Assembly: GCF_006345805.1 (NCBI RefSeq)
Contig: NC_043009.1
Location: 16,926,001 to 16,990,000 of the forward strand
Direction of reading: 5' to 3'
Origin: Octopus sinensis
Taxonomy: Eukaryota
DNA length: 64,000 bases
The notes beneath the pieces are model-generated. The model did no database searches. It saw nothing but the letters and a program-made list of their open reading frames with translations, and had not been told where the DNA came from. A program made the position numbers and the translations under genes. Below, piece by piece: positions 16,579 through 64,000 of the stretch. Each line of letters begins with the position of its first letter. The stretch's first letter is position 1.

Positions 16579-16640
16579 TGTCTTGCTGATGAGTACGGTC
16601 GAAACTGCGATAAGTACGAAATCACAGGTGATACAAGACT
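16579..16640 (+). ncRNA. Type I hammerhead ribozyme, copy 2 of tandem pair
   Basis: Same as copy 1 except one change at the distal end of stem I (GTCTTG/CAAGAC, 6 bp); cleavage after 16633, 482 nt downstream of copy 1. Confidence 0.88.
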
Positions 16641-20982: not shown

Positions 20983-21209
20983 TTAACCCTTAAACATTCA
21001 GATTACTGTGTCAAATGTAATTCTTATTTATTTACATCATTTTGAATTAATCTTGCATTATCTCATAGCTTTGAGATTTCAATGATGTGGTTGTTTATTT
21101 TTAGGATGACATTGTAGGGTAGGTGTGAAAGGTCAGATCTGACTGGTTTGACCATAAGAAAGGGAAAATATTTGGGCTGGATACAGCCAGCTTAAATGCT
21201 AAAGGTTAA
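20983..21209. mobile_element. piggyBac-like MITE (TTAA-flanked)
   Basis: TTAACCCTTAAACATT...AATGCTAAAGGTTAA; same family as 2433-2659. Confidence 0.75.
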
Positions 21210-22229: not shown

Positions 22230-22800
22230 ACTTTAGTGGGCCGTAAATGGAAAATGACCTAATATAAAGCAACGTGAAATGCAGTAAATCTTAATTTTCA
22301 CATTTTTCTTCCAGATGTATTGGTAAATCACTATGGTAGATTCCAATTTGATATGGGAAATAAAATGGCAGTTGTAGTTGCCAGCCAAAGCAACTGGAAG
22401 GTTGCTAGCTTCTTGAATGTGATTAGGTCCCTTGCGTTCAGAGATGGGAAAGTGCAGAAGGCTTCATGTCAACCATATTCATCAAAAACCAACATTCTCA
22501 GCAATCAGATGTCATAAGAACAGTTGAGTTCATTCAGCAGGTTGAGGGTCAGTGACAATGCTAGAAAGTCGATGAGGGCTATCATAGTCCAGTATCAGAT
22601 ATCTGATGCATGAGGACATGAGATACAAGTGATAAGGAGAGGGCATCCTGAGTAACTTGACATGCTTCAATTTTGACAAGGAGAATAATCAGAATCAGAA
22701 GATGAACAAGAGAAGTGATGAGTTGATCTGGACAAGCTCCACAGCTATCATACATGATCCTTTCTGATTTCACATTCGAATAGAAAAAGAGTCAGCTATA
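22230..22800 (+). mobile_element. Highly decayed Tc1/mariner (maT-like) transposase N-terminus
   Basis: Fragments VASFLNV.RS, DVIRTVEFIQQV, RKSMRAI, MHEDMRYK in shifting frames. Confidence 0.45.
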
Positions 22801-22970
22801 CAAAAAAATGTGCTTTCAAAAATTCACAAATGCCTTGAATTTAGAAAAATGATCCGTCTATGCTAGTTGACCCATCTGTGCTAATGTGGATGTAAAAGCA
22901 GTAAAAAGAAATGCATATAAATTCTTTACTGGGCTCACTCAGTATGCTTTATAATTTAAACTTCACTGAC

Positions 22971-23114
22971 CTTGAGTAATTGTCCAATTTCCACAGACTT
23001 TAGGCTGAGGAGGTAGATGTAACAGACTTATAGTGAAGATTCCACTAACCACTTGGTAGCTACGCAGGTCAACAACGTCTGGGTCATCATCAAACTCATC
23101 AAATTCAGGAGGTG
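22971..23114 (-). CDS. DNAI7: DNAI7 exon 9
   Basis: taactag|CACCTC...CTCAAG|gtcagt; 144 nt, phase 1 to 1; DDDPDVVDLRSYQVVSGIFTISLLHLPPQPKVCGNWTI matches CASC1 VVDLCQFTTLGGVYHLDILELPPQCK..GW.I. Confidence 0.95.
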
Positions 23115-23704
23115 CTAGTTAACAAAATAAATTTATTTACTAAGTACATGTAAGGGAAACAATGTAGTCTTAATATCAAATTCAGATAGGTAGAGATAGG
23201 GGTAGTCAAAGCATACAATTATGCATATAAGGGGACAATTAAGTAAACTAGCACACATTTATCTTAGAACATAATATGTGTAATGGAGCATGAAGCTCTG
23301 CGACCTAGGTTGGTGGGCAGTTTTCATAACTATTTTCCCCTCTTTTTTCCCTGTAACATTTTTAGTTTTAGATGTAATATCTCTCAACATTGAAACGATA
23401 TTTTGTTGATTTCTCTACAAAAACATAATACTAAAAGTAAGGGAAAAGAAGAATTCCATATTTCAAATTTGCTGTCCTTTCCTGAGATACTGAAAAATAA
23501 GTGAAATGAAAAGATTACAAGCAGGAATTGAAACTAGATTCTAGCTCAGCCTATCACTCCACTTCTATAGCATATGTTTATAAAAGTACTATCTTTATCA
23601 CCTTTTGTACAATCTCTTTGAGAAGATTTTAGTTTAGCATGGCAGGATGATGAAATATCATAAACTTCCTACATTGGAGAACTGCATGTCACTATTTATT
23701 AACT

Positions 23705-24101
23705 ACTAGCAGTATCGCCCGGCGTTGCTCGGGTTTGTAAGGGAAATAATTATATAAGCATTTTTAGAGATGTAAAGTATAATAGACATCTCAATATGGC
23801 TAACCACAAAGGGGGAGGGGTGTTAATGTAGCTTTTTACGTTCTGAGATTTAATAATAAATTTTAGAGAGTTACTTCCCTTATATATGTCAAAAATGGAT
23901 TAAAAATGGGAAAAATTGATGGTAAATTTTTTTTTAAATCGTAGACTCATCGTAGATGCGCGCTAATACCCAGACGGTCTCGATATGAATCACGACTATA
24001 AGATACCCGGTTTTGGTTAAACTGCACCGCAAAATGTGGGAGTAGTTAGGAATCTAAATCGTAGGCGACAGACACACAACCTCACTTTTATATATAAAGA
24101 T
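23705..24101 (+). mobile_element. Helentron/DINE-1-like non-autonomous element
   Basis: Starts ACTAGCAGTATCGCCCGGCGTTGCTCGGG (short subterminal hairpin) and ends GACAGACACAC...CTTTTATATATAAAGAT, the layout of HINE/DINE-1 elements. Confidence 0.6.
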
Positions 24102-24264
24102 TTCCTCTATTTACATAATATTGAGGTCTCTTTCTTTCTTTTGTTATCTTACTGTTTTTACCAATATACATATATATATATATATATAAATATATATATA
24201 GTTACAGAGATGTACTTGCATAGTAAGTGACTTGATCTGAGATCGTGTGCTGGAAAGAAAACAG

Positions 24265-24523
24265 TTGCAGCGTTGAAGGTGTTTATAAGCCATTTAAGAA
24301 ACACACAAAAACCGTTAGATTCACTTCAACATTTAAATTTAATTTGTGAAAATATTTTCGTCGCTTTGAGACCGTGACCTGTTAGCACGATATTTTTGTC
24401 AGTGAACAGGTCGCGGTCTGAAAGCGACGAAAATATTTTGGCAAATTAAATTTAAATGTTGAAGTGAATGTAACGGTTTTTGTGTGTTTCTTAAATGGCT
24501 TACAAACACCTTCCACGCTGCAA
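24265..24523. mobile_element. MITE, almost fully self-complementary
   Basis: About 120-bp inverted arms TTGCAGCGTTGAAGG.../...CCTTCCACGCTGCAA with about 20-nt spacer. Confidence 0.8.
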
Positions 24524-24888
24524 TATATATATACACACATATATATATATGTATGTATGTATGTATGTGTGTATATGTGTATGCATGTATGTGTGTGTGT
24601 GTGCGTGTCTGTGCTTGTGATTGTCCTCCACCACTGCTTGACAACGAATGTTGGTTTGTTTACATCCCTGTCACCTAGTGGTTTGACAAAGGAAACAGAT
24701 AGAATAAGTACAATGCTTACAAAAATAAAACTGGAGTTGATTCATTAAACTACAATTCTTCAAGGCATTGCCCCAGCATGGCCACAGACCAATGGCTGGA
24801 AAAAGCAGAAGAATAAAAGAATACATTCTCTGCTTTGGTCATATGTTGAAGGCATGAGAAAGCTTGAGTTTACATGAGAAGGCCTAAC

Positions 24889-25261
24889 AGACCTGGTAGA
24901 AACAGCAGCCAAATCTCCCTCAAATCACACCTTACTGTCTTATGTATGTATATATATATGAGCCAATGAGGGGGACCTCTACATGGTAGCTAGACCTGGT
25001 AGAAATAGCAGCCAAATTTCCCCCAAATCACACCTTACTGTCTTATCTATGTATATATGTATGTATGAGCCTATGAGGGAGACCCCTACATGGCAGCTAG
25101 ACCTGGTAGAAATAGCAGCCAAATTTCCCCCAAATCACACCTTACTGTCTTATCTATGTATATATGTATGTATGAGCTATGAGGGAGACCCCTACATGGC
25201 AGCTAGACATGGTAGAAATAGCAGCCAAATCTCCCTCAAATCACACCTTACTGTCTTATCT
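24889..25261. repeat. Tandem repeat, about 106-bp unit, 3.5 copies
   Basis: Unit starts AGAC(C/A)TGGTAGAAA(T/C)AGCAGCCAAAT at 24889, 24992, 25099, 25205. Confidence 0.9.
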
Positions 25262-26118
25262 TTCTGCTACTTGGATATAGGTGTTATATTCGTCGTAAAA
25301 AACTTTCCTGTCACACACTCACGCACACGCACACACACACACACGCACCCTCACACACACACACACGCGCACACCCACACACACCCACTCACACACACGC
25401 ACGTTAGCTTACAATTTTATTTATATATTTGCGTGTCTGTGTGGAAAGAGGAAGTGGGAGGCAGAGTGAAAGAATCACTCACTACAGTAAGTCAATTACT
25501 TTCATTTTATTCGTTGCCCACTGTGTGTGTGCGTTTGCGTGTGCTGTAAACCAGACTAAGAAAAGCATTTGACACACACACCAGAATGTGAGTTTTCTGT
25601 AAATTTTGCTTAACTGGAGTTTAAATTTTAAAAACTGGACCTGGCATGACGCGATGCATTGTACTCTTAAAAATGCAAGGTAAATTGTAATTGAAGAAAT
25701 CCTATATTGTAGATTTGTATAACTCCCAAAGGGAGGCAGATAAAATCTGCCTTTTATAATAAGAGATTTCCAGGTAAATGAGCTGAGTCATTAACAGTTA
25801 TGTTATTGCTTAGCACTGGTGGCAAAATATGTGCTGACAACCTCTCAACAATAGACCCAACTGTCTACAATCCTCTTTTGACCATTAGACTGTCTTTTGA
25901 GGTTCTCTGCTCACCTGAAAATTTATCAGGTATGAATACTTCAAAGAATGCATTTCTGTGTACTGATCTGTAAGTGATGAGTTATGAAAACAGTTTCCAC
26001 GAACCATGAATTTGAAATGTGATCTGTTTGGATAGAGCACCTAAGAAATGAAATTCTTGAACCTATAAGAAAGAACAAATAAGTAATGATACTGATGCCA
26101 CATCTTACTATTGCTTAC

Positions 26119-26245
26119 CTGGAGATTGAGGGAATGGATATTCTGCCACTTCTTCATCTTCAAGTTTCTTCACTTCAACACGCTTAGGTTCTTCTGGAGC
26201 TGGTTCACCAAACAAATTAATGCTTTGTAGAGCAGCACTGATATC
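26119..26245 (-). CDS. DNAI7: DNAI7 exon 8 (acidic linker)
   Basis: cttgtag|GATATC...CTCCAG|gtaagc; 127 nt, phase 0 to 1; DISAALQSINLFGEPAPEEPKRVEVKKLEDEEVAEYPFPQSP. Confidence 0.85.
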
Positions 26246-31179: not shown

Positions 31180-32189
31180 CTACCGAATAATTGTCACATA
31201 TTATTTTACAGATAAATTTCCTCTATTTACATAATATTGAGGTCTCTTTCTTTCTTTTGTTATCTTACCGTTTTTACCAATATGTATATATATATATAAA
31301 TACAGACATGCATAACAAGCTACCAATACATCTCTTGGTTAGTCCAGGGCTACTATAATAGAAGGCAGTCCTCCAAAGTGATGCACTGTGGTACTGAACC
31401 CCAAATCTCATGGTTTTGAAGGCAAACCCCTTTACCACTATATCAGATAATAAAATCAGTTGTATGATACGCCATTAGTAAAACTGCTTCATCCCCAGTG
31501 AATCATAAGGCAGCAATTATCTGCCTGCATCAGGTTTGCATTTGTTGCAGGACTTGCCTTGAATGCTTTCTGGATACATCACACCTAGCAAGGCGGTGAG
31601 CTGGCAGAATCATTAGGACCCCTGGCAAAATGCTTAGTGGCATTTCATCCATCTTTACAGTCTGAGTTCAAATAGTGTTGAGGTTGACTTTGCCTCTTAT
31701 CCTTTCAGGATCAATAAAATACAAGTACCAGCTGAGCATTGGGATCAGTCTAACTGACATAACACCTTCCCCCAAATTTCTGGCTTTGAATCAAAATTTG
31801 AAACCAGTGATGGCAATTTTCTCATACACAATCTGAAACATTGGCAATGTTTGATTTTTTTGATCCTTGCACTTCATAGTTATGGTTGCATAAACTTTGT
31901 GATACATACACTCACATACACATACCAAAATATACACACTGACTTAATATATTTGTTTGTAAATATGTATAAATGTGTGTTTATCAATATTCATACAAAT
32001 TCCATTTTTTAACTCCCTCTACCTGTTATTTCTATGAGGATGGAGTCTATGTGTATATGATATGTATGTATATTATGTGTGAGCGTGTGTGTGTGGGGGG
32101 GGGTGCATGCATGTGTGCATGCATATATGCATTTATATACTACACATAGAGATATGTCCAAACCACAAATCCCTTCAGGGAGATGACCC

Positions 32190-33308: not shown

Positions 33309-33545
33309 AAAGCAGTGGGCTGGCGGAATCATTAGCATGCCAGGCAAAATGCCTAACGGCATTTCATCCGTCCTTATGTTCTGAGTTCAAATTCTGTCAA
33401 AGTCAACTTTGCCATTCATCCTTTTGGGGTTGATAAAATAAGTACGAGTTGAGTGTTGGGATTGACATAGTCATCTCATCCCCTGCCCTGAAATTGCTGG
33501 TTTTGTACGTATAGTAGAAAAGATTATTATTATTATTATTATTGA
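33309..33545 (+). mobile_element. SINE family B
   Basis: GGCAG.G.GCTGGC.GAATC.TTAGC...TTCTGAGTTCAAATTC...TCATCCTTT.GGGG..GATAAAATAAGTAC; other copies at 1282-1495, 5405-5630(-), 18835-19008(-), 31588-31810, 35162-35372, 47795-48016, 50897-51105. Confidence 0.82.
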
Positions 33546-47450: not shown

Positions 47451-48705
47451 AGAAACTGGAAAAAACCACAAACTTACAAAGGAAATTAAGTTGTTACACA
47501 AAAGAGATTTGTTGCAAAAGAAATATGTTTGAAGCTGTTACATAAAAGAAAATTGCATTGAAAGTGTTAAATATTATTGACCAGAATATATTCAGTAACA
47601 TTTACCAATTTATGTTCTCAAAATTGAGAAAAAAAAAAAGAAAAGAAAGAGTGATTTTATGACTCCATGTAATACAGACAAAATCATTTTTAATGTTTCA
47701 GGCTTACATACACTCAAGAATCTATTATTCACTCATATTTCTACACAGAAATTTAGTATTCTTTGTGCACAATTTTTTTTTAATATTTGAGAGCACAAGA
47801 CAGTGAGCTGGCAGAATTCTAAGGACACCAGGCAAAATGCTTAGTGGCATTTCATCCGTCTTAATGTTCTGAGTTCTAATTATACCAAGGCCAACTTTGC
47901 CTTTTGTTCTTTTAGGGCTGATAAAAGAAGTACCAGTGGGACTCTGGGGTTGATGTAATCAACTTATGCTCTCTCCTGAAATTGCTGGCCTGATACCAAG
48001 ATTTGAAACCAATATTTGAGAGCACACTTAGTGAAGTGAACAGTGGCTGCATTTAATCCAAGCATTCCATTTTTTCTTTCATACACTGGCTATAAATGAT
48101 TTCATTAATGAGAATGTCATTTTAAATTAATTAATGGGATATTTATTTGAGAGAGATTTGGTGGCAATTTCTATCCGGTTGAGCAACCAGCTGTTGGCTT
48201 GTGAAGCTTCTGAAGCAAAACTTTTGTTTGGTGAGGAGAGAAAACTTGGTAAAGACTGACAGAAGAGTGACATTTTGAAATATTAGATTCTTTTGACAAA
48301 AGACCAGAAATTTCAGTTGTAATTAGTGAATCACAGAAATGTGCAGGCTGTGTGATGGACAGAAACAACTTTTTTCTCTTAAAAGTCATTTTCTAAATAT
48401 AATGATGGATGAATTCTTCTAAGCTATGATGAAGGATGATTTCTTCAAGGTGTTTTTGCCAATGCATTTCATTTATACAGCTGGCTTAGGCAGTATAAAG
48501 AATGTGGAAAGGTATTGCATGGCAGATAATTTAGTATGGATAATTTTAAGAGAGATTAGTGCCTTAGTAGAGGTTTTTTGGATTGAAGTCTATAGATAAT
48601 CCATTTTAACCCTTTTCCCATTTATCACACCAGAAGAAAAATCTAAATAGAAATACATTATAATCACAAGATAATTCATAAATCTCAATAAGAGGTGATA
48701 CTAAC

Positions 48706-48789: not shown

Positions 48790-50678
48790 CTGTAAATAGA
48801 AAATATTGAGACATGTTTGAAATGTAAAATTTGTAGACCATTACACTTATTTAAAATCATGTCTAGAAAAACTGAACAGTGTCACCACAAGGAAACAAGA
48901 ACTTATAGTTTCATTTGGATCAAAGATTTGCTATGACTGATGTGACTGTGTGTGATGCAAGAAGGCAAAATGCCATAAAATACTACATGCCATTTTAAAT
49001 CTTTTATCTTTTAATTGTTTTAGTCATTAGACTGTGGCCATGCTGGAGCACCATCTTGAAGAGTTTTAATGAAACAAATCAACTCCAGGACTTATTATTT
49101 TAAGCTTAGTACTTATTATATTGGTCTCTTTTGCCAAAATGCTAAGTTGCAAGTACATAAATAGACCAACACTGATTGTTAAGCAGGGGTGGGGGACAAA
49201 GTCTGCACTATAACACATAACACTACTATTGTTGAAGAATGCTGCAATATACAGTGCAACAACAGTTTAAATTCAAAAATAGTCTGACTGGATGTTAGCC
49301 CAATTTAGAACAAGGAATTATGATTGTTAATATCTTGCTGTGATTGATTCCAGGAGATTACAAATGTTTGGTGTAGTATTTGACTACATCAAATGAGTTT
49401 GAAAGCCAAACATGAAACTGAAGAACATTCTAATAAAGTAATGATTGTAATAAGAGAAATGTCTCATCGCTGCATCTGTTGTTAGGAAATCTTATGATGT
49501 TCACTGCGGTGTTGATGAGTTTTGCTATGAAGAAAGTTAGAAATAGCAACAGAAACAAAAATCTAAAGACATTTATAGATCATTAGTACAATTTTAAATA
49601 TTGATTTCTCTTTTTACTAGGAACAACACAAATTTCTGCAAGTGAGTTAGTATAATCAATTGAACCAATTATATTGGTCTGATTCAATCAATTCAATTGA
49701 TTATACTGGGTTGATTTAATAGAATTGATTATACCGAGCTGATTCAATCAAAACCAAATGATGCAAATAATACAGTCTGTGACTGCACTGTTTCTGCCAG
49801 CTCACTGCCATTTAGAATTTTTAATATTATCATATTATCATCTCATAGCAATCTTTGACACACTCACAGCTGCACATATTGATTATAAAACAGATTGCAG
49901 CATCCTGAATACATAATTTATTGATACTTGATGTGCTGAAGCCATATTCAGTAAAGTGCTAATTAAAACATGATCAAGTGTTTGAGTCAATAATCTACCA
50001 ATACTTGACATGGTTTTAGAAATAGAAATAGTAACAGCATCAAATAGTATTGACACGATCAAAGAAATTAAGGAGAAAATCTAAGAGAATATCAAGACAC
50101 TTTGCTAAATTAACAAATTTTAAGATTTAATAAAAGCACAATTATACTGTGATGAATTTTGGAAAAGTTTACAGAAGATACTTTCTGATTTGACTTTGCA
50201 GAATTTCAGAAAACAGAAAGGATGATTATTCTTCAGTCAGTCTGTTTCATTGTAAAGCATATCACAATACATACATACATGCATATACATACATGTATGT
50301 GTGTACACACACACACACACACATACACATATACACATGTGTGTGAGTGTGTGTATGTATAGGTAGATACTTAGTTATAGACAATGACACACTAAATGTG
50401 AAGACATTTAAAATATATTCCGTTTTCTTTTAATAATTAAATTGTTCTGTTGACAATTCAACCATCTTCATCTAAGCTAGCTACATGAAGGAAGGTGAAT
50501 CAGTGAGTTAATTCTGCAAGATGTTAAGAATATGGTGACATCCCATCTCTATACTATGACACTCTTAGACAGAACTAAGTGCAAATATAAAAACCAACCA
50601 AAACTTCCTAAATTTCAAGTTTCAAAGAACAAACCACAAAGTCATTTCCATTTTTTTGGTGTGTCATCAATAGCAGAG

Positions 50679-50790
50679 CATAGACTCACAAACTAGTTTC
50701 ATTAACAGTTAGTCATGGATTCACAAACCAACCCCATTAACAGCTAGCCATGGGCTTACAAAAAGACCTCATTAACAGTCAACCATTGAC
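50679..50790. repeat. Degenerate minisatellite, about 34-bp unit
   Basis: Recurring CATTAACAG.TAG.CATGG..TCACAAA. Confidence 0.7.
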
Positions 50791-51410
50791 CTAAGGAAAA
50801 AAAGCCCACTTGAAATGAGCATCTGACATATATACCCTGTTTGATGATGTCTTGCTTCAACAATGCATGCGTGAAATATTTCTCTACAATATTATGATTC
50901 TGGCAGGATTGTTAGTACGCAAGGAAAAATGCTTAGCAGAATTCCGTCTGCCTTCACGGTCTGAGCTCAAACACAGCTGAGGTTGACTTTGTCTTTCATC
51001 CTTTCAGGGCCAATAAAATAAGTACAAGTTGAGTACTGGACTCCATGAAATCAACTATTCCACTTCTCGAAACTTGCTGGCCTTGTGCCAAAAATTTGAA
51101 ATCTGTATTCTTCTTCTGTGTCTTTGTAGATTAAAACATGCATCAATTGTGTCTCATTACCCCCAAAACACACCTGCAGTATATCTGTATCAATAAAACA
51201 GTCATTGATCACTACATACTAACATGCACATACATCTCTATACACAAAACACATCTATTTAACAGCTCTACACACCAACATTCACATCTAGCATTTGTCT
51301 ACAAACTAACATACAAACTAAAGTGAACAAAACTGTCCCAGATCTCTACACAACAACACATGATTGTTGTAATCCTGACAGAGTATAAATTAACAAGGAA
51401 GCCTCTACAT

Positions 51411-51656
51411 CAGTGCTTCTCAACCATTTCTTTCCTGTAGAACCTTTTCCTTCCTATTTTATTCAGGTGGACCACCATAGCCATTCAATGCTTAAAAATA
51501 TCTCATATTTTTAACATTAAATATTATTAAGAACTGTATAAAAAAAAATATTTTGTGTATTATAAGGAATATAACCAATTTATTATACATGAATTTTAAC
51601 TACAAAATCATATATGGACCCTTAAGGGTCACCTGGACCCGGGTTGAAAATCACTG
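51411..51656. mobile_element. hAT-like MITE
   Basis: CAGTGCTTCTCAACC...GGTTGAAAATCACTG; decayed 8-bp TSD ctctacat/cactactt. Confidence 0.65.
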
Positions 51657-52083
51657 CACTACTTAGTCACTTGGGCTGCTAGAAATAGTAACCAGATTCC
51701 CTCAAATCTTACTTAAAAAAAGGAGAAACATACTGAGTAATGTAGTCCTAGACGTACAATGCTGGAACACCTTTGACCATAAATCTACTCAGTAAGAGCA
51801 AACCTGAGGTTGAACAGAATGACAAATAATAAACATAATTATAAAGGTAGTGAAAAAAAAGGCATTGAAAGGGTGATGCATAGCCTCCATGCAGAGAAAT
51901 TTTTTCACAAATTATAGTGTGGCTTACAATGTGTTACTTAGCCAAGCTTTTTAATTAAACTGAATTAATCTTTTTTTTTAAAGTTTTACCATTACAGGTA
52001 TTTATATTCAGGTGAAATTAAGAAACCAACTCATATCTAAATGAAAGCCTCAAATCCATCAGTGTATACACACCCGTGCGAAT

Positions 52084-52115
<32 letters not shown>

Positions 52116-52135
52116 TCAGTCGCATATCTACGTAC

Positions 52136-52166
<31 letters not shown>

Positions 52167-52329
52167 TGTATGTATGTATGTATGTATGTATGTGTGTGTG
52201 TGTGTATGTACCCACATGTGTCTATGCGCATAGGTACAACATGATTTATACACATATGGAAAAGAAAGAGAACAAAATACTATGACCATTTGCTTATTGG
52301 GAAATTTGTAAATGAGATTTCTTTTTAAT

Positions 52330-52520
52330 TAAAATTTTTTTTTTAAAGGATAATCAAACCAAATGTTCATCATTTTGAGCCACTTACCCAATGAGTATTT
52401 CTGCCAAATTTGGTAAAAATCCGTTCAACCATTTTCCAGTAATTTTGCAAACACACAGACAAGCAAACAAAGAGGAGTGATTACAATACCCTGATTTCGC
52501 TTATGCATGCAGGCTAATGA
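52330..52520 (+). mobile_element. Helentron-like element 3' segment
   Basis: CCAAATTTGGTAAAAATCCGTTCAACCATTTT...CAGACAAGCAAACA...ATTACAATACCCT...CGC; ends about 15 nt from the exon 3 donor. Confidence 0.45.
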
Positions 52521-52533
52521 AATGAGCACTTAC

Positions 52534-52674
52534 TGCCAAATTCAGGAGACTGTTTTCTAACACTGTTTCAATATCATTGTTTTCATCATCTTCAAGAGCC
52601 AGGCTCATATATGTATTGATTTCTTTTTGTATCGTGGGATCAGGAGTTCCATCACATCTCATAAAACGCTCCCA
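52534..52674 (-). CDS. DNAI7: DNAI7 exon 3
   Basis: tttatag|TGGGAG...TTGGCA|gtaagt; 141 nt, phase 0 to 0; [25 protein letters not shown]... matches the CASC1 motif W..Y..CDGSPDP...E.NTF. Confidence 0.95.
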
Positions 52675-54049
52675 CTATAAACAAACAAAATTTAGTATAC
52701 ACAATTAGTAAGGATTACATATCTAAAAAAAGAAAACTTATTATTAGAGAAGTATCAAAAGGAAATTTGATAAATTGGAAATATATCAAGTTGAAATGAT
52801 AAAAGCAAAATTTCAAACCAAAAATCAGAGAATAACCCATTTAGTTATCACACAAATTTGGGGGTAGTTCCTCCCTCTCTTAAACATTCTCCTCATTCAG
52901 CAAGAAGTTGCTGAACAAGGAGAATGTATAAGAGAGGGAGAAACTACCCCCAAATAGAGTTAATAAAGGGACAGCTGTTGAAGCTGATACCTTAAAGATT
53001 GGAGAAACATATGTTTGGGAAAGAAATGTCAAGCATTTCAAGAGGCAGGAACCTGTCAAAAAGGAACACCAAGGAAAATATTGGAAGAAGTGCTGAAGCC
53101 TGATTTTATGAAAGAGATAACAAAGGTACTGAGCTGGACAAGACTGGTCCAACACACACAAGCAGGGGAAAATGGACATAAAATGATGATGATGATAAAA
53201 AAAAAAAATTATAAATGTGTGTTTGTGTGTGTTTAAGGAGGTGGCTAAGTGGTTAGGGTGTTACATTCATGATTGTAAGATTGAAGTTTCAATTCCTGGA
53301 GTGAGCAGTGCATTGTGTTTTTGAGCAAAACACATCATTTCATAGCCCCAGCCCACTCAGCTGGCAAAATTCCTGTGATGGGAGAAATGACATCAATATG
53401 AAGGTGTTGCTGAGTGCTGTTGCTTCATCAGCTACAAACAGCCCAATAAGAATGAAATTATTCTTATCAAAATAGTATACAGTAAATTTGCCGATCTGTG
53501 TAAAGCTTGGTCAAGCTAGAATTAAATAATGTTGGACAAAGCAGCAGTGAATAAAAAATATTTGAGCATTTGGACATAAGAAGTGTAAAGATATGTGTTC
53601 ATAGCTGATGAAGTGAGAAGATGCAGGAATGCAAATGTCCCACATTCCAATAACATCATTCACAGCTCAGAAAAGGATTTTCAGCTGGGACTACCGCTAG
53701 AGCAGGTCTTTTCACATCTGAATACACTCAAGTTAAAAATGACTTTACACACATATAAAATTTATAAGCTGCTGTAGGTATAACTGCAATGAAAACTGTC
53801 TGAAAATTATGATGGTTGTGCATGTGATTGAAATATCTAAACAGATTCAGTAAGGGATTTAGAAGTAGTTGTGCTGTTATTAGACAAAAATGTTGATAAT
53901 CACTGCAGAAATATACATTACTGGGCTGATTGTACAAACTTGGTTTGTAGCTTTTGTAGAATTTGAACTCAGAACGTAACAGCAGACGAAATACCGCTAA
54001 GCATTTCGCCTGGCACGCTAATGTGTCTGCCGGCTCGCCTTATATATAT

Positions 54050-54470
54050 CAAATGTGAGGATAAAATTCTTTTCGAAAAAAATATTTTCTCGAAAAAAAT
54101 CTTATCAATGGCCAGCATATTAAAAAATACCTTTAACGGTTAAATTTATAAACAATTCATAAATGAGGGCAAAGGAAAAAATTTCTAATGCCAAATATGC
54201 CGAAAAATTGGACATATTGTCCATTAACCATATAATTTTTTCACAATACGCATGCTACTCGAAAAAAGGTCGACAGAATTTTCTAAAAAAGTCCATTATT
54301 ACCATATCGGACCGATTTCAGAGTTAGCTACTAAGAGCCCTCTCTTCATCAGTGATACATGTGGCAAAAGAAATAAATGAGATACTTACTCATACCCATG
54401 GAAGAAGCAAACACTAAGTCATGAGCACAATTAAGTACCCCAAATACTTCCAAAATAGAAATACTCCAGC
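54050..54470 (-). mobile_element. Solo hammerhead-bearing pseudo-LTR/retrozyme-like unit
   Basis: About 420-bp non-coding block carrying the 54300-54357 hammerhead, between a TA run and a CA run; boundaries approximate. Confidence 0.5.
54300..54357 (-). ncRNA. Type I hammerhead ribozyme, sense to DNAI7 pre-mRNA
   Basis: Minus strand: TATCA CTGATGA AGAG-(18 nt)-CTCT GAAA TCGG-T-CCGA T A TGGTA; stem I 5 bp (one G.U), stem II 4 bp, palindromic stem III; cleavage between 54305 and 54304. Confidence 0.82.
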
Positions 54471-54727
54471 CCACATATACACACACCCATCTTCGTGTTT
54501 TGTTTTTTTTTGTAAATTCTCACTACATATATATATACATATATATACATATATATATCATCTGTGCACTTGTGTGTATGTGCATGTCTTGACATCATCG
54601 GACAGCTGAATGAGCATACGTCACTGACCATCAGACAGACAATGTTGTTCGTTTCCAGTCTTCTGCCTGACCCATGCAAGCATGGAAGAGTGGAAAGGAG
54701 AATACTAAAACAATCACAATGATAATG

Positions 54728-54764
<37 letters not shown>

Positions 54765-54967
54765 CAGTGTACTACATGTCAATAAATTTTAGATGAGTTA
54801 TAGCTAGCTTAGTATATTCATTCTATTATGTTTTGTGAGTCATTATCAGTTCAGAACAGACAATTGGATTTGTGATGAAGGTTAGTTCTCCAGCAGCATC
54901 AACTGATGTGGCAGTGAGATAATAAAGCAAAATATAATTTTACAAAACAATAAAGAAAACTACTCAC

Positions 54968-55072
54968 CCTTTCTTCCTTATGCCTTTGCCAAAGCACATC
55001 TTTGAAATATCTTTCCTGTTCAATCGCCATTTCATCAATTTCCCGAAGTTCCACCACTCGTTGTTTCCTTTC
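54968..55072 (-). CDS. DNAI7: DNAI7 exon 2
   Basis: cctaaag|GAAAGG...GAAAGG|gtgagt; 105 nt, phase 0 to 0; ERKQRVVELREIDEMAIEQERYFKDVLWQRHKEER. Confidence 0.88.
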
Positions 55073-55336
55073 CTTTAGGAGAAAATTTAGTAAACATACA
55101 TGTGTACACACACATATACATATACATATATACATATATATATATATATAAATATATACATATATATATATATATAAAAATAGGAAAAATGTTTTGGTAT
55201 TTATTTTCCATTTTTCTCTTTTGTTTCTTTAATTCTCAATTTTAATATGTATTTTGATTAACATACAACAATAACTATGGATATGTATTGAATGTAATAA
55301 TGGAATAAGCAAATGTGTTTAGAGGAAAAAGGTGCA

Positions 55337-55756: not shown

Positions 55757-56625
55757 TATACTAGGTGTGGTGAAAAAATTGTCATCTAAATTACGCAAAA
55801 ATGAAAAGAACACTGACATCGTATTTTAACAGATATATTTACCAATATTACATAAAAATATCTTGAAATTTGTTCAATAAAATTGCCATTGGTATCAATC
55901 ATGGCTTCCACACAACTTCAGAACCTCCTGCTTCTCTTCTGGATGGTCTCCTTATTTAAGTTGGTGAATGCTGCCATAATCTTTGCCTTCAGTTCATCTT
56001 TGGTGTTACAAATTTTGTTTGTCTCTTGCTCAACTGTGCCCCACACATAATAATCAAGGGGGTTGCAGCCTGGGGAGTTAGGTGGCCAAATGTTTGGGGT
56101 GATGTGGTCACAGAAATTGTCTGACAACCATGATTGGGTTCTCCTGCTTGTGTGGCATGGTGCAGAGTCCTGTTGCCAAACATAGAGTCTTCCAACAACC
56201 AACTTCTTGACCCAGGGCAGCACTACCTCCTCCTGGCACTTGATGTAGGCCTCTGCATTGAGTCTGAGACAGTGTGGGAAGATGAATGGAAACATAACAT
56301 CGCCATCACTAGTGATCACTCCAAATGCCATGATGTTGACTGAATGTTTGATTTTTATCACTCTTGGTACATGTTTTGGGGACTCAGATTGACACCCAAC
56401 ACTTCGAAATGTTTGTATAGGAGCTTTCGGCATGAATGCCAAGCAGTACAACATGTCATTTCCAAATTTCTGGTAGAGTGAATTGTGTCATGGCACTGTT
56501 TTTCTCACAGACAATGCTCAACTGACCCTACTATACTGTGTAGTTGATAAAATGAAAAACAAACAATGTGCATGCATGAAATTAAAAATATAAAATGGCG
56601 ACAATTTACCCAACTGCATCCTGTA
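55757..56625 (-). mobile_element. Tc1/mariner (maT, DD37D-like) transposon relic
   Basis: ORF 55918..56454 VWQQDSAPCHTS...WPPNSPGCNPLDYYVWG; degenerate TIRs at both ends. Confidence 0.88.
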
Positions 56626-57159: not shown

Positions 57160-58450
57160 AGAGGGTGAGTCTTCTCTCCGGAAACTCATGTCGCCAGACA
57201 TCTCAGTCCATTGTCATTTCCTCCATGAGCCCCAACATCCTGAGGCTGGTCCTCACCACTTCATCCCATGTCTTCCTGGATCTTCCTCTTCCACAGGTAC
57301 CATTCATTTTCAGTGACCAGCACTTCTTTATACAGCTGTCTTCATTCATACACATCACATATCCAAACCAATGTAGTCTTCTCTCTTGTATGCTGCATTT
57401 GATTCCTCTCATGCCCAACTTTTCTCTCACAACATTCATGCTTTGTTATTCATGCACATCCAATGGAGTATACTGCCTTCATTCCTCTCTAGTCTACACA
57501 TTTCCTCTGCATTCAGAGCCCATGTTTTACTACTATGGAGTATAGCCATTGGTACACAAGCATCATACAATCTACCTTTTGCACAGAGAGAATTCTTTTG
57601 TTGCCAACAAGTAGAAGCCCTCTGAACTTCCTCCACCCTATTCTTATTCTAGAAACAATACTTTCAGAGCATCCACCACCGTTGCTAATTTGTTAACTTA
57701 AGTAACAGAAACTACATCAAGAGAGCCTCCTCAGTATTTAAGAGAGCCTAAGTCCTGTGTGCTCTTAGTGCTTATTGTTCCTGCACATCTGAAGCAACCT
57801 TATCTGTTAATCTACCTCTGATTCTACCGCATCTCTTATGTATCCATAGTTTACACTGGGTGTAGCAAATGGAATTACTTCCAACTCCCTTCCTACATAT
57901 TGAGTAGGACCATTTAGCTGATGGAAAAATAGTCTTATCTGTTTTCTTGCTAACAATAACTTTGGTCTTTGCTAGGTTAACCTTAGAACACTTTGATTCT
58001 AGATTTTGCTTCCATACCTCGAATTTCTTCTCTTATTCTGCTTCAGATGCTGCAATAAGAGCAAGGTCATCTGTGTATAGTAGTTCCCACAGGTATCCTG
58101 TCTCCATTCCTATGATGAATAGGAGTGGATTAAGAACTGAGCCCAGGTAAACCCCTACTTGTATACTAAATTCATCAATGTATTCATAGCCAACTCTCAC
58201 CTTACTGACAGTACTACTGTACATGGCATGTATGGCTCAAACAAGATTCTAGCTTCCTTATAGACCACCAGATAACAGAGCAAGGAACTCTGTCAAAAGC
58301 TTTCTCCATGTCAATGAAAGCTAAGTACACTGGTTTACTTTTGGCCAAATACTTTTCTTGCAACTGTCTCACTAGGAAGATGGTATCTGTGGTGCTCCTC
58401 CCAGGAACAAAACCAAACTGCATCTCATCTAGTTTAATTCTATTCCTAAT
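57160..58450 (-). mobile_element. Decayed RTE-clade LINE
   Basis: ORFs 58214..58474 (MQFGFVPGRSTTDTIFLVRQLQEKYLAK..FIDMEKAFDRVP), 58033..58224 (LLYTDDLALIA), 57203..57439 (RRLHWFGYV...GRGRSRKTW). Confidence 0.92.
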
Positions 58451-59112
58451 CAATTGAGCTCTATACATACACACACATTATCATCATCATTTAATGTCCA
58501 TGTTTCATGCTAGCATGGGTGGGACAGTACCACAAGCGCTGGCCAGGCCGAAGCCTGCACCAGATTTCGTGACTGTTTTGGCAGGATGTTACAGCTGGAT
58601 GCCCCTCCTAACACCAACCAATCAGCAGAGTGGACTTAGTGTTTTTTATGTGGCACAAGCACAGGCGAGGTCTTTACAGCTGCATGCCCTTCCAAACACC
58701 AACCACTTTACAGTGTGGACTGGGTGCTTTTCAGTGACACGTGCAGTGACAGGGTCACCAAGTACTTGAAAGACAAAATCTTTTGAGAGGGGAGGAGACA
58801 TTGGAGGAGGTGATGATGAAAAGGTTATAGCGAGACAGATACAGGTGTCTTGCTGTAGAGGAAGTACAAGGTTTCCCAGTCAGAGAGAGAGAGGAAGATC
58901 AGGAATAAAGACAGAAACAGGTGTGCTACCACAAAGAAAATACACAGTTGCCCAACCTGAGGGAAGTGCAGGAGGAGAGAGAGAGAGAGTGGGAGACCAC
59001 AGGATGGAGATGGTGGCAAAATGCCGGGCATACTCACAAGGAATAGGGATCAAAGTATAAATGAGATGGTTGAGTAAAGGAAGAGAGAGATAGAGCTATT
59101 GGCAAATATATA

Positions 59113-60281: not shown

Positions 60282-60707
60282 TATAGAGCAATAAGAAAAT
60301 GGAGGGGGTCAATAGGTGGTTCATCTACTTTTAGACATTATATTATGTCAACTTATTTATTTACTAAAATGACAATTACAAGAATATACATACATGCATA
60401 ACATATTATGCTTTACATATAAAAGTATATTAATATATAAAGATACCAGTAAATATTAAAATGTAACAGACAGGAATATAAATTGGGAAACAATTTATTT
60501 TCCCAATTTATATTCCTGTCTGTTATATTTTAATATTTACTGGTATCTTTATATATTAATATACTTTTATATGTAAAGCATAATATGTTATGCATGTATG
60601 TATATTCTTGTAATTGTCATTTTAGTAAATAAATAAGTTGACATAATATAATGTCTAAAAGTAGATGAACCACCTATTGATCCCCTCCATTCTCTTATTG
60701 CTCTATA
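60282..60707. repeat. 426-bp near-perfect palindrome (209-bp arms, 8-nt loop)
   Basis: Arms 60282-60490 and 60499-60707, no indels, about 3 A/G-type mismatches. Confidence 0.95.
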
Positions 60708-60719: not shown

Positions 60720-62110
60720 TAAGGAAAATAAGAGAAGGCAGAAAATGCTAAAATAATTTTATCCTAAAGAACATTTTATTACTGGTTTCAGTCATTACGA
60801 CTTTTTCAACTTAGAGTAAAGTATGAAAAACAATTAAATTGTGGGAAAATTAAATGAAATGTTTTTTTAAAAAATATATTTCCATAGTTTTCAAATGGAA
60901 GGGACACTTTCCATTTTTCTGCCTGTCTCTGTTTCTCTTTTTTTACTCTTGTGGGTTGTAGGTAGTTAGCAGCAGCTAGTTTGATATAAATTCTTGTCTT
61001 TGATTGTTTAAGCAGCAGTAGTAGAGAAAGGAGGCAGCAGCGGAGAAGGAGGAGGAGGAGAGAATTTGGGTGTGGTATGACAGTAGCAGGATGTTGATGG
61101 AATCCACTTAAATGGTCCAGTGACCTAAAAGTGACACGTTGTGGATGATAGTAGTGATTGAAATCGTTCTGAATAAATTCTTGAGGTGACTGTTTTGAAT
61201 ATATCTTTTTTAATATTTGCATGGGTGTTATTCTAAGGCCCTGGTGACAGTGTCATTTGTTGTGGATGTATTCAAAAGGGGGTTGGTACTATGTGATAAA
61301 GAATGATTCTTTACTAATATGCTGACTACAGGTTGTATCGTCCCTGAATTGATAGAGAGGAAAGATTCTTAAGCTTGGTTGTTTGTTATTGGCGCAAATG
61401 TTGATGTGTTCGCTGAATGCTACTTTTCTGCTTTTTTGAATTTTGATCTGGGATCTGTGCAGAGCCAACCTTTGGTGTAGACTGGTTTTTGTTTGGCCTA
61501 TGTATTGCTTTAGACACCTAGAGCAGGTTACTATGTATATCAGGTTCTCTGAAGCACATGTGAAGTTGCTCTTCACAGTGAAACGTTGACCCTGTCTGAA
61601 AGAGAACTCTGATCCCTCAATTAGATTGATGCCTATACCACAGTTAGGTCTTCTGCATTTTTTTACTGACAGCTTCTGTGTTGTTGTTGAGTGTATTCAG
61701 GCTTGTGTTGGGAAACTTTTCATAGATTTGGGCAATCTTTTGCTCTTTATGATGATGTGGGTTTTGAGAATTAAATTCATTCTGTGGTCCCTTTTTAGTA
61801 GGGGAATGTTTTGGAGGATGGTGTCGAAGGCTTCATTGTTAAGAGGGTTTTGTGTGGAGATGTATAGTAGGGCTTTGGGTTGTAAATCTTTCTTTAATTT
61901 GGGATGTCTGTGTTCGTGGATGTTGAGTTGTAGGTCACGTTGAAAGCATATGTCAATTAGTGATGGTGGGTAGTTCTTGGGGATGAGTGTATCCTTTAGT
62001 TCATGTAGTCGTGTGTCCCTGGTGCATGTATTAGAAACTATAGTACAAATCCTTTTTGATAGATTGAAAGGGATATTCATTCTAGTGTGTCTGGGGTGGC
62101 ATGAATATAA
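60720..62110 (-). mobile_element. Penelope-like element relic (RT C-terminal/linker plus GIY-YIG endonuclease)
   Basis: ORFs 61697..62080 and 61289..61576 share a frame across one stop; linker KKCRRPNCGIG; LIYIVTCSRCLKQYIGQT is a GIY-YIG motif; possible decayed hammerhead near 60775-60815. Confidence 0.85.
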
Positions 62111-62248
62111 ATTACCTATAATTTTTTTATTTTATGCTGACTACCTGATAAAATCATTAATATGATTTTATCCTTCTATTCTAGTATGTGTGTGTGTATA
62201 TACATACATATATATATACATATACATATATATATATGTACATATATA

Positions 62249-62992: not shown

Positions 62993-64000
62993 CTATTAAA
63001 AATGAACAAAAATTAAATAAATAAACAAATCTTATAATAATTCTGCTTGTCATTGCATTACTTAGTCCATTGGTAACACTTTCACATGATTAGAGAAAAA
63101 GAGGGAGAAAGAAAAAGAGGATAAGGTGAAGAGTGAGACAAAAAGAATGAGAATGAGAAAGAAAAAGAGAGGGAAAGATGGAGTGAGAGAGGAAAAGTGG
63201 GAGGGAGAAGAATCCATGACATGAGGTAGGGGAAGGTAATAATTTTAGCAGAGGGGTGATGTTCTGATGGTGAAGCTAAAGAAAGGCAGAGAGAGAGAGA
63301 GGGAAGAGAGAGGAAGGAGAAAGAGAGAGAGAGATGATGATGGTGGTGGTTGTAGTGGTAGTGACTGGATAGTGAAAAGTGCATATTTTTAATTAAACTA
63401 AGTTTTTTTTTATATCCCCTATCACTTAACGCATGCACATATGTGCAATTCCGTGAAATATTTGTGCCTATTTACATGGCAGATATATGCAATTTAACTA
63501 AAGATTGTTTCATATGTACAGGATATTTGTTTTTGTTTAAGGGAAAAGAAGAGTAAATATTTATTTTATGAGTGCTGCGTATTAAGTCTATTAAATTGTG
63601 CATTAAGTATATAAAGTGTATATATAAAGTGCATTAAGTAAACATCATGTTCCAATTTCTTTCACTTTTCAATGAATAGCTGATGAGTGACTCTCTTTCC
63701 ATACAGACACAACACAGGCTATTCTTTCAGGTTTTTTAGGATAAAGCTTTCAGAAATAATCCACGAAGTTCACCATTAATTCCGTATCAATAAATAAATA
63801 AGGAGATGTGATAGTGGTTATTGTGGTCATGTGCATGTGGTTTGGTGGTTGTTGGTTGTTTTGTCCTAGAGGAAGTGATACCTGTTGGTGCTGCTTTGCT
63901 TAAGCAGGTGTAAACATGCAGATAGTTAGCTGAAGTGACAAAGCATAATCCAGAGATCTGATTTCCCAGCTATATCATGCTAGTGCTACGTTAAAAGCTC

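What the first reader, a model, noticed from the sequence alone, without database searches (positions are those of the whole stretch)
54050..54470. Intact hammerhead in the sense orientation of the DNAI7 pre-mRNA (intron 2)
Seen: minus-strand TATCA-CTGATGA-AGAG...CTCT-GAAA-TCGG(T)CCGA-TA-TGGTA with a fully canonical core and ATA site, about 660 nt downstream of exon 2. Known: intronic self-cleaving ribozymes exist in vertebrate genes (e.g. the CPEB3 HDV-like ribozyme and conserved intronic hammerheads), and cleavage can compete with splicing. The 1-nt stem III loop is sterically poor and typical of Penelope hammerheads that need dimerisation. Inference: the host intron could be cut co-transcriptionally, or the motif is tolerated because a solo copy cannot dimerise.
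Basis: partly seen in the sequence, partly recalled or inferred. Interest (0 to 1): 0.78.

Follow-up and report, generated by a model that had tools for sequence, protein, structure and literature searches.

The report
Solo transposon-type hammerhead in DNAI7 intron
A complete hammerhead ribozyme motif does sit in the sense strand of a DNAI7 intron, but it looks like a lone, weakly folding copy of a ribozyme-carrying mobile element, which is common in animal genomes, not a dedicated regulator of the gene.

Summary
Minus strand 54357-54300 reads UAUCA|CUGAUGA|AGAG-18 nt-CUCU|GAA|AUCGG-U-CCGAU|A^|UGGUA. The catalytic core is complete and the predicted cut lies between 54305 and 54304.

It is not a chance match. 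About 0.003 motifs of this strength are expected per window. It also shares a detailed architecture with two hammerheads in a 482-nt tandem repeat at 16.1-16.6 kb of the same window.

The host gene is a DNAI7 orthologue on the minus strand (PDB hits, E 1e-7). The motif lies in the sense strand, 663 nt into a 2293-nt intron. The intron number cannot be verified.

The motif sits in a ~470-nt AT-rich segment flanked by (TA)n. Its sense RNA is unusually structured. No reverse-transcriptase gene adjoins it. This fits a single copy of a non-autonomous "retrozyme"/Penelope-related element.

Predicted activity is poor:
- Helix II starts with A10.1-U11.1 instead of G-C.
- No Rfam hammerhead model matches it.
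- The hammerhead fold is 8 kcal/mol worse than a competing hairpin.
- Even the dimer fold is not favoured, and there is no partner copy.

Verdict: a real motif of a known kind, most likely a neutral passenger. Cleavage of the pre-mRNA is untested and looks unlikely to be efficient. Other genomic copies and orthologous introns could not be examined with these tools.

The parts
54300..54357 (-). Type I hammerhead motif. Stem I UAUCA/UGGUA (5 bp, one G-U). Core CUGAUGA...GAA. Helix II AGAG/CUCU, extended by an inner 4-bp stem and a hexaloop. Helix III is the near-palindrome AUCGGUCCGAU. H17 is A54305, with the predicted cut between 54305 and 54304.
   Evidence: Sequence read. Descriptor scans. 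Shuffle controls. Folding.
54306..54316 (-). Helix III, AUCGG-U-CCGAU. As a monomer it can form at most 4 bp plus a triloop. Between two copies it forms 10 bp plus one U-U mismatch.
   Evidence: the isolated hairpin scores 0.0 kcal/mol and the intermolecular duplex scores -13.9 kcal/mol. The sequence occurs only once in the window.
54320..54345 (-). Helix II module: 4 bp starting with A10.1-U11.1, an internal loop (AG on the 5' side, AA on the 3' side), an inner 4-bp stem opening with G-U, and a hexaloop. The geometry is the same as in the hammerheads at 16.1 and 16.6 kb.
   Evidence: Constrained folds. The shared 18-base skeleton matches only these three sites in the window and none of 100 shuffles.
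54362..54457 (-). Long imperfect RNA hairpin immediately upstream of the hammerhead: 32 bp, 9 of them G-U. It is therefore specific to the sense strand.
   Evidence: -38.8 kcal/mol, z -4.8. The opposite strand gives -11.6 kcal/mol, z -0.14. Pair counts.
54051..54521 (-). Putative inserted element of about 470 nt, 32% G+C, carrying the single hammerhead. The boundaries are inferred from the flanking TA-rich microsatellites and are approximate.
   Evidence: Sense RNA folds at -132.4 kcal/mol, z -4.5. Antisense RNA folds at -77.7 kcal/mol, z -1.4. G+C. No other copy in the window. Size and G+C resemble the 482-nt unit at 16036-16517.
54041..54057 (.). TA-rich flank and one copy of a 17-nt direct repeat, TATATATATCAAATGTG. 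It is a possible target-site duplication or simply microsatellite sequence.
   Evidence: family D4.
54550..54566 (.). Second copy of the 17-nt direct repeat, TATATATATCATCTGTG (15 of 17 identical), on the other side of the putative element.
   Evidence: family D4.
54968..55072 (-). DNAI7 exon upstream of the hammerhead (105 nt, AG|GAAAGG...GAAAGG|GTGAGT), encoding ERKQRVVELREIDEMAIEQERYFKDVLWQRHKEER.
52533..52674 (-). Next DNAI7 exon downstream (142 nt), encoding [25 protein letters not shown]... It sets the host intron at 54967-52675 (2293 nt).

Best explanation
The motif is a genuine type I hammerhead carried by a single (solo) copy of a small non-autonomous retroelement. The element is of the retrozyme / Penelope-related kind. 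It inserted into a (TA)n microsatellite inside a 2.3-kb intron of a DNAI7 orthologue, in the same orientation as the gene.

In active relatives, hammerheads of this design occur in tandem units. Their palindromic helix III pairs between two copies to form a double hammerhead. That double hammerhead cuts unit-length RNA out of a multimeric transcript.

This copy has no partner. Its helices I and II are weak, and its core is predicted to be tied up in a competing hairpin. It therefore most likely cleaves the DNAI7 pre-mRNA very slowly or not at all, and persists as a neutral passenger.

What is shown: the motif, its strand, its position in the gene, its structural kinship with the tandem copies, the lack of a partner, and the unfavourable folding energies.

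What is inferred: the retroelement origin, the element boundaries, and the low activity.
For: (1) The core and all three helices are present. About 0.003 motifs of this strength are expected per window.

(2) It has the same architecture as the two hammerheads at 16097-16158 and 16580-16639, which sit in a 482-nt tandem repeat with an inverted truncated copy and (TA)n flanks. Shared features:
- helix II of 4 bp;
- an internal loop with AA on the 3' side;
- an inner 4-bp stem opening with G-U, and a hexaloop;
- helix III AUC...GAU of 5 bp with a 1-2 nt loop;
- H17 = A.
All helices differ in sequence but keep pairing.

(3) The shared 18-base skeleton matches only these three sites and none of 100 shuffles. 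None of the 98 metagenome skeleton matches I could check forms the helices.

(4) The surrounding ~470 nt resemble the 482-nt unit in size and G+C (32% against 33%).

(5) The sense RNA is strongly structured while the antisense is not: z -4.5 against -1.4. The upstream hairpin has 9 G-U pairs out of 32. The tandem unit shows the same sense bias: z -7.75 against -4.97.

(6) Both elements end about 250 nt after the hammerhead, at a (TA)n tract.

(7) Helix III is unstable alone (0 kcal/mol) but scores -13.9 kcal/mol between two copies.

(8) There is no second copy or decayed partner in the window.

(9) Literature: dispersed monomer copies of animal retrozymes are common. 44% of Xenopus copies overlap introns (bioRxiv 10.64898/2026.07.22.740005). 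Single minimal Penelope-element hammerheads show no detectable cleavage in vitro (PMC4209133).
Against: - No other copy of this ~470-nt element could be found. The tools hold no animal genome collection, so membership of a repeat family is inferred, not shown.
- There is no significant sequence similarity to the tandem unit outside the hammerhead.
- No Rfam hammerhead model matches, even at E <= 10 in a 121-nt search.
- A10.1-U11.1 replaces the highly conserved G10.1-C11.1.
- The element boundaries and the putative 17-nt target duplication rest on low-complexity sequence.
- Two of 12 background windows also reach z < -4, so the structure signal is supportive only.
- Nearest-neighbour energies ignore the tertiary contacts that stabilise hammerheads. 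Low activity is therefore a prediction, not a result.
Confidence: 0.72

Rival explanations
1. The hammerhead is active on the DNAI7 pre-mRNA, either alone or after pairing with a second transcript carrying the same helix III. It cuts the intron 663 nt after the 5' splice site. This lowers or tunes DNAI7 mRNA output by competing with splicing, like the CPEB3 ribozyme or the conserved intronic hammerheads of amniotes.
For: - Complete core, sense orientation and intronic position.
- The 3' splice site lies 1630 nt downstream, which leaves time for a cut before the intron is complete.
- Precedents exist. Inhibiting the Cpeb3 intronic ribozyme raises CPEB3 expression (PMC10919898, abstract). Intronic type I hammerheads are conserved in RECK, CTCL and DTNB (PMC6155905).
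- Compensatory variants at 10.1-11.1 occur in natural hammerheads of cave crickets (PMC2837043).
Against: - The predicted hammerhead fold is 8 kcal/mol worse than the competing hairpin (-7.3 against -15.4). Its equilibrium share is 1e-6 or less, with or without flanks.
- The double hammerhead scores -28.5, worse than two separate misfolded monomers (-30.8) and the dimer optimum (-37.2). For the tandem copies the double hammerhead is the optimum.
- There is no partner in cis.
- There is no match to Rfam HH9, HH10 or Hammerhead_1.
- The intron holds other mobile elements, which fits neutral accumulation.
- Conservation could not be tested.
Confidence: 0.08
2. The motif is a chance match to the hammerhead consensus in AT-rich intron sequence. 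It has no ribozyme ancestry.
For: - A genome of a few gigabases would hold on the order of 100 chance motifs at the rate of 0.003 per 64 kb.
- No Rfam hit.
- A-U at 10.1-11.1, weak helices I and II, and a much more stable alternative hairpin.
- No other copy was found.
Against: - The extra features shared with the tandem hammerheads of the same window were not part of the search descriptor. These are the inner stem opening with G-U, the hexaloop, the AA bulge, the AUC/GAU helix III with a 1-2 nt loop, and H17 = A.
- My rough product of base and pair frequencies puts a chance match to that architecture far below one per genome.
- None of 98 chance matches to the 18-base skeleton in metagenomes has the helices.
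- The surrounding sense-strand RNA structure and the (TA)n flanks match the neighbouring ribozyme-bearing element.
Confidence: 0.1
3. The motif is the hammerhead of a terminal repeat (pLTR) of an autonomous Penelope-like element. It would be left behind after loss of the reading frame.
For: - A 5'-truncated Penelope-like fragment with a GIY-YIG domain lies 7 kb upstream on the same strand, at 62131-61292.
- Short helix I and long helix II match the description of Penelope-element hammerheads (PMC4209133).
- A recent preprint derives animal retrozymes from Penelope pLTRs, so the two origins overlap.
Against: - No reverse-transcriptase or GIY-YIG reading frame lies within the intron or adjoins the motif.
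- A DNAI7 exon lies between the motif and the Penelope fragment.
- That fragment and its relatives L100 and L102 carry a different candidate ribozyme: a UUGAAAA or AUGAUUA core with GAAACCGGU.
- There is no bulged base after A9 and no G10.1-C11.1.
Confidence: 0.1

Closest known systems
Animal non-LTR retrozymes: type I hammerheads in short AT-rich tandem repeats that give rise to circular RNAs (Cervera & de la Pena 2020, PMC7229834)
   Same: Type I hammerhead. AT-rich unit of a few hundred nt (32% G+C, about 470 nt). Highly structured sense RNA. Helix III suited to pairing between two copies. A clear tandem example lies in the same window at 16.1-16.6 kb.
   Different: This copy is single, not tandem. 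Its hammerhead has A10.1-U11.1 and weak helices I and II. No circular RNA or other family member could be examined. The ~470-nt length exceeds the roughly 300-bp typical monomer size quoted in that paper.
Minimal hammerheads in the terminal repeats of Penelope-like elements (Cervera & de la Pena 2014, PMC4209133)
   Same: Short helix I (4-5 bp), extended helix II (about 8 bp), palindromic helix III region, expected to work as a dimer, mostly found as dispersed single motifs. Single motifs are inactive in vitro.
   Different: Here helix III is a full 11-nt near-palindrome, not absent or 1-2 bp. There is no bulged base between A9 and 10.1, A-U replaces G10.1-C11.1, and no Penelope reading frame adjoins.
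Conserved intronic hammerheads of amniotes (RECK, CTCL, DTNB; de la Pena & Garcia-Robles 2010, summarised in PMC6155905)
   Same: Type I hammerhead in the sense strand of an intron of a protein-coding gene. Thought to derive from retroelement hammerheads.
   Different: Those are conserved across birds and mammals or wider. From my own knowledge, they also cleave as single motifs. Here conservation is untested, the monomer fold is disfavoured, and Rfam's whole-library scan, which includes its hammerhead families, found nothing.
CPEB3 HDV-like intronic ribozyme (PMC10919898)
   Same: Self-cleaving motif in an intron, in sense orientation. Its cleavage can compete with splicing.
   Different: A different ribozyme class, conserved in mammals, with demonstrated activity and effect on expression. 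None of this is shown here.
Newt satellite 2, Schistosoma Sm-alpha and cave-cricket pDo500 hammerheads
   Same: Type I hammerheads in repeats. Some have a weak helix III and work as double hammerheads. Cave-cricket copies show compensatory changes at 10.1-11.1 (PMC2837043).
   Different: Those are abundant tandem or SINE-like families with demonstrated cleavage. This is one copy with no demonstrated relatives.

Membership tests
Hammerhead ribozyme, type I | Conserved core C3-U4-G5-A6-N7-G8-A9, G12-A13-A14, A15.1-U16.1, and H17 not G | tested here: met
   CUGAUGA at 54352-54346, GAA at 54319-54317, A54316 pairing with U54306, H17 = A54305.
Hammerhead ribozyme, type I | Three helices around the core, with helix I open (the ends of the motif) | tested here: met
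   Helix I 5 bp, helix II 4 bp plus 4 bp, helix III 5 bp on paper or 4 bp plus a triloop in practice.
Hammerhead ribozyme, type I | G10.1-C11.1 pair closing helix II (highly conserved) | tested here: not met
   A54345 pairs with U54320. No alternative register restores G-C, because U directly precedes G12. Natural compensatory variants are reported (PMC2837043).
Hammerhead ribozyme, type I | Match to the Rfam covariance model Hammerhead_1 (RF00163) at its gathering score | tested here: not met
   No hammerhead family is listed even at E <= 10 in a 121-nt search. The tandem copies at 16.1 kb reach 17.5 bits, also below the gathering score of 34.
Hammerhead ribozyme, type I | The hammerhead fold is the stable or near-stable secondary structure | tested here: not met
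   -7.3 against -15.4 kcal/mol for the 58-mer, with a predicted share of about 1e-6. It is worse with flanks. For the tandem copy the values are -13.7 against -15.8.
Hammerhead ribozyme, type I | Site-specific self-cleavage giving 2',3'-cyclic phosphate and 5'-OH ends | not testable with these tools
   Needs in vitro transcription or RNA-end sequencing.
Animal non-LTR retrozyme | Tandem repeats (dimer or more) of a short unit, each with a type I hammerhead | tested here: not met
   Single copy. There is no second hammerhead within reach, even with 2 core mismatches allowed, and no repeat of the segment in the window. Dispersed monomers of such families are known.
Animal non-LTR retrozyme | AT-rich unit (G+C below 45%) of a few hundred nt with strongly self-paired sense RNA | tested here: met
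   32% G+C over 471 nt. Sense z -4.5 against antisense z -1.4.
Animal non-LTR retrozyme | Multiple related copies in the genome, and circular RNA products | not testable with these tools
   No animal genome or transcriptome collection is available. Exact-pattern scans of viral and metagenome contigs found nothing related.
Penelope-like element terminal-repeat hammerhead (min-HHR) | Located in direct repeats flanking an RT plus GIY-YIG reading frame | tested here: not met
   No such reading frame lies at 50500-55200. The nearest Penelope fragment is at 62131-61292, beyond a DNAI7 exon.
Penelope-like element terminal-repeat hammerhead (min-HHR) | Unpaired base between A9 and 10.1, G10.1-C11.1, and a minimal or absent helix III with palindromic 15.2-16.2 (PMC4209133) | tested here: not met
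   No bulge, A-U at 10.1-11.1, and helix III of 11 nt. Only the palindromic character is shared.
Domesticated intronic hammerheads (HH9, HH10) | Sense orientation within an intron of a protein-coding gene | tested here: met
   Intron 54967-52675 of the DNAI7 orthologue, minus strand.
Domesticated intronic hammerheads (HH9, HH10) | Conservation of the motif in the orthologous intron across species | not testable with these tools
   No related animal genomes are available. Protein searches with DNAI7 exons returned nothing.

The most novel reading that the evidence does not exclude
The lone hammerhead is functional after all. One route is in cis, helped by cellular factors. The other is in trans, by pairing its palindromic helix III with abundant RNAs from other copies of the same element family. 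Expression of a mobile-element family would then control cleavage of the DNAI7 pre-mRNA, and so the output of an axonemal dynein subunit.
Probability: 0.05. Interest if true: 0.6.

Novelty: new member of a known kind. Interest (0 to 1): 0.22.

Why it matters
If it is only a passenger, this is one more dispersed copy of a ribozyme-bearing retroelement. Such copies number in the thousands in many animal genomes and often lie in introns. It then matters mainly for annotation, as a repeat-derived ribozyme motif, not a regulatory element.

It would matter more if the copy cleaved the DNAI7 pre-mRNA, or if it were conserved in the orthologous intron. That would be an invertebrate counterpart of the domesticated intronic hammerheads of amniotes.

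The window is also a compact example of three ribozyme contexts side by side: a tandem retrozyme-type pair, a solo copy, and a Penelope fragment with a candidate variant-core minimal hammerhead.

Tried and rejected
- Rfam, whole window at gathering scores, then local searches at E <= 10: no hammerhead match for this motif.
- Self-comparison of the window by blastn and nhmmer: no second copy of 54058-54515.
- Local alignment of the element against the 482-nt tandem unit: not above shuffles.
- MAFFT alignment of the three hammerheads to build a covariance model: it misaligned the helices, so I dropped it and used a relaxed descriptor instead.
- Exact-pattern scans of viral contigs and metagenome contigs for this hammerhead: 0 hits.
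- Scan for the 18-base skeleton shared with the tandem copies: 99 metagenome stretches reported. None of the 98 matches I could check forms hammerhead helices, so they served only as a null.
- Protein searches with DNAI7 exon peptides in the 5.8-billion-protein collection: nothing. Pfam on single exons: nothing. The gene was identified through PDB sequences instead.
- Exact look-ups of window reading frames to identify the source organism: not on record. The organism remains unidentified.
- Homologues of the Penelope fragment and their contigs, to look for this hammerhead type in Penelope terminal repeats: they carry no CUGANGA core at all, only a different candidate minimal ribozyme.
- Terminal inverted repeats suggesting a DNA-transposon miniature element: only about 9 bp of weak similarity (I7 and I9). 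Rejected as the main reading.
- A tRNA gene call for the adjacent SINE-like sequence: none.

Full report
**1. The observation**

The minus strand at 54357-54300 reads UAUCA CUGAUGA AGAG AGGGCUCUUAGUAGCUAA CUCU GAA AUCGG U CCGAU A UGGUA. Every invariant hammerhead position is present:
- C3-A9 at 54352-54346
- G12-A14 at 54319-54317
- A15.1 (54316) pairing with U16.1 (54306)
- H17 = A54305

A descriptor scan of both strands finds only three such motifs in 64 kb. They are this one and two on the + strand at 16097-16158 and 16580-16639. Allowing two core mismatches adds none.

In 300 dinucleotide-preserving shuffles the loose descriptor gives 0.1 hits per window. Motifs with helices as long as observed give 0.003 per window. 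That rate still allows roughly a hundred chance motifs in a gigabase-scale genome, so more evidence was needed.

**2. Evidence that it is a real hammerhead lineage**

The two + strand motifs lie in a 482-nt tandem repeat. The units are 16036-16517 and 16518-16890, 97-98% identical. The repeat is preceded by a 98-nt inverted truncated copy and flanked by (TA)n on both sides. This is the layout described for Penelope-type insertions (PMC8557442) and for animal retrozymes (PMC7229834).

The finding's motif shares no sequence with that unit outside the core. It does share the architecture in detail:
- helix II of 4 bp
- an internal loop with AA on the 3' side
- an inner 4-bp stem opening with a G-U pair, and a hexaloop
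- helix III beginning AUC and ending GAU, 5 bp around a loop of 1 or 2 nt
- A at the cleavage site

An 18-base skeleton built from these shared positions matches exactly these three sites in the window and none of 100 shuffles. The same skeleton was reported in 99 metagenome stretches. None of the 98 matches I could check forms hammerhead helices. The helices are therefore not a by-product of the skeleton.

**3. The host gene**

Minus-strand exon candidates were identified through solved structures. Three N-terminal exon peptides hit dynein axonemal intermediate chain 7 (9fqr_Hn at E 1.1e-7, 8j07_k3 at E 3.4e-6), colinear over residues 29-137. More C-terminal exons hit IC97/Casc1 and DNAI7 at residues 366-474.

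| Exon (minus strand) | Length |
|---|---|
| 62992-62898 | 95 nt |
| 55072-54968 | 105 nt |
| 52674-52533 | 142 nt |

All three have consensus splice sites and continuous reading phase. The hammerhead lies in the sense strand of the 2293-nt intron 54967-52675. The cut site is 663 nt from the 5' splice site and 1630 nt before the 3' splice site.

The intron number cannot be confirmed. The first exon seen starts at an AG acceptor and aligns from residue 29, and no start exon is visible at 63100-64000. The source organism was not identified.

**4. The surroundings**

The motif sits in about 470 nt (54521-54051, 32% G+C) between TA-rich microsatellites. These carry a 17-nt direct repeat (15 of 17 identical) that may be a target duplication.

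The sense RNA of this segment folds at -132.4 kcal/mol (z -4.5), the antisense at -77.7 (z -1.4). Directly upstream of the hammerhead is a 32-bp hairpin with 9 G-U pairs. It scores -38.8 kcal/mol (z -4.8) in sense and -11.6 (z -0.14) in antisense. The tandem unit at 16 kb shows the same sense bias: z -7.75 against -4.97.

Twelve background windows have z near 0. Two fall below -4, both on both strands. The signal is therefore supportive, not decisive.

Both elements end about 250 nt after their last hammerhead, at a (TA)n tract.

No reverse-transcriptase or GIY-YIG reading frame adjoins the motif. The same intron also holds a tRNA-like SINE copy, and the upstream intron holds mariner-like, LINE and Penelope-like fragments.

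**5. Likely activity**

Energies below are ViennaRNA predictions in kcal/mol.

| Quantity | This motif | Tandem copies at 16 kb |
|---|---|---|
| Helix III as a lone hairpin | 0 | 0 |
| Helix III duplex between two copies | -13.9 | -11.2 |
| Hammerhead fold, monomer | -7.3 | -13.7 |
| Best monomer fold | -15.4 | -15.8 |
| Predicted share of hammerhead fold | about 1e-6 | about 0.01 |
| Double hammerhead | -28.5 | -39.4 |
| Best dimer fold | -37.2 | -39.4 |
| Two separate monomers | -30.8 | -31.6 |

This copy nevertheless folds poorly in either form. In the monomer the competing hairpin pairs the core CUGAUG with AUCGGU of helix III. The predicted share of the hammerhead fold falls further when flanks are added. 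The double hammerhead is not favoured for this motif, whereas for the tandem copies it is the optimum.

Three further points count against efficient cleavage:
- Helix II opens with A10.1-U11.1 instead of the highly conserved G-C. Compensatory variants at this pair are known in cave crickets (PMC2837043).
- No Rfam hammerhead model matches at E <= 10. The tandem copies reach 17.5 bits.
- There is no partner in cis.

Published work found no detectable cleavage by single minimal Penelope-element hammerheads. Amphibian retrozyme monomers cleave only weakly, while dimers cleave well (PMC4209133; PMC7229834).

I therefore expect slow or no cleavage of the DNAI7 pre-mRNA. The caveat is that nearest-neighbour energies ignore tertiary contacts and cellular factors.

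**6. Comparison with what is known**

The closest kind is the animal non-LTR retrozyme, here as a dispersed monomer. It is related to, but not the same as, the minimal hammerheads of Penelope terminal repeats.

It resembles the domesticated intronic hammerheads of amniotes (PMC6155905) and the CPEB3 ribozyme (PMC10919898) only in position and orientation.

Intronic monomer copies are common. In Xenopus, 44% of retrozyme-homologous sequences overlap introns, although they are depleted there relative to intergenic DNA.

**7. Verdict**

The motif is real and correctly described. Its reading as a functional cutter of the host intron is not supported. It is best filed as a new member of a known kind, of low interest unless genome-wide and cross-species comparisons or cleavage assays say otherwise. 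None of those could be run here.

Noticed in passing
window 15938-16890 (+): Retrozyme / Penelope-pLTR-like array. It has a 98-nt inverted truncated copy (15938-16035, 100% complementary to 16680-16777). This is followed by 1.77 tandem units of about 482 nt, with two canonical type I hammerheads at 16097-16158 and 16580-16639, flanked by (TA)n. The double-hammerhead dimer is the predicted optimum. The unit RNA folds with z -7.75. Rfam Hammerhead_1 scores only 17.5 bits, below its gathering score of 34.
   Followed up: partly
window 61292-62131 (-): 5'-truncated Penelope-like element fragment in two reading frames. It has a Pfam GIY-YIG domain (E 3.7e-5). It is about 50% identical to six unnamed ENA/Logan proteins carrying RVT_1, GIY-YIG and HTH_animal hits. 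It lies in the intron upstream of the hammerhead's intron.
   Followed up: partly
window 60780-60809 (-); L102 about 1140-1185; L100 about 1720-1760: About 480 nt downstream of the Penelope reading frame lies UUGAAAA|AGUC-GUAAU-GACU|GAA|A-CCAG-U|A. This is a candidate minimal hammerhead with a U3...A8 core covariation, like the Cercyon variant in PMC4209133. A related Logan contig has AAGAAAU|UUGAAAA|GC-UACAC-GC|GAA|A-CCGG-U|A|AUUUCUU with a perfect 7-bp helix I. A TARA contig has AUGAUUA...GAAACCGGUU. These were seen by eye only and not tested statistically.
   Followed up: partly
window 53950-54040 (-), with further copies at 33319-33395, 31595-31673, 47828-47891 and 1300-1363: A tRNA-like SINE head (GGCGAGCCGGCAGACACAUUAGCGUGCC...GAGUUCAAAUUC) abuts the 3' side of the hammerhead-bearing segment. 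ARAGORN calls no tRNA there.
   Followed up: partly
window 55921-56487 (-) and 57206-58477 (-); also about 12025-13155 (-): A mariner/Tc1-like DDE transposase remnant (weak Pfam DDE_3 hit) and LINE-type reverse-transcriptase remnants (RVT_1 hit for the 58-kb copy; the copy near 12.0-13.2 kb was judged by eye only). All lie within DNAI7 introns, in the same orientation as the gene.
   Followed up: no
window 60330-60660: A long, near-perfect palindrome. The sequence around 60480-60540 reads the same on both strands for more than 150 nt on each arm. It lies downstream of the Penelope fragment and may be an inverted duplication of the kind that accompanies Penelope insertions.
   Followed up: no
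window 8853-26245 (-): Further DNAI7 exon candidates at about 26245-26111, 23118-22966, 14036-13569 (part) and 9242-8853 (part). Those at about 23118-22966, 14036-13569 and 9242-8853 align to residues 366-474 of DNAI7/IC97. The window therefore covers much of the gene, with introns of many kilobases.
   Followed up: partly
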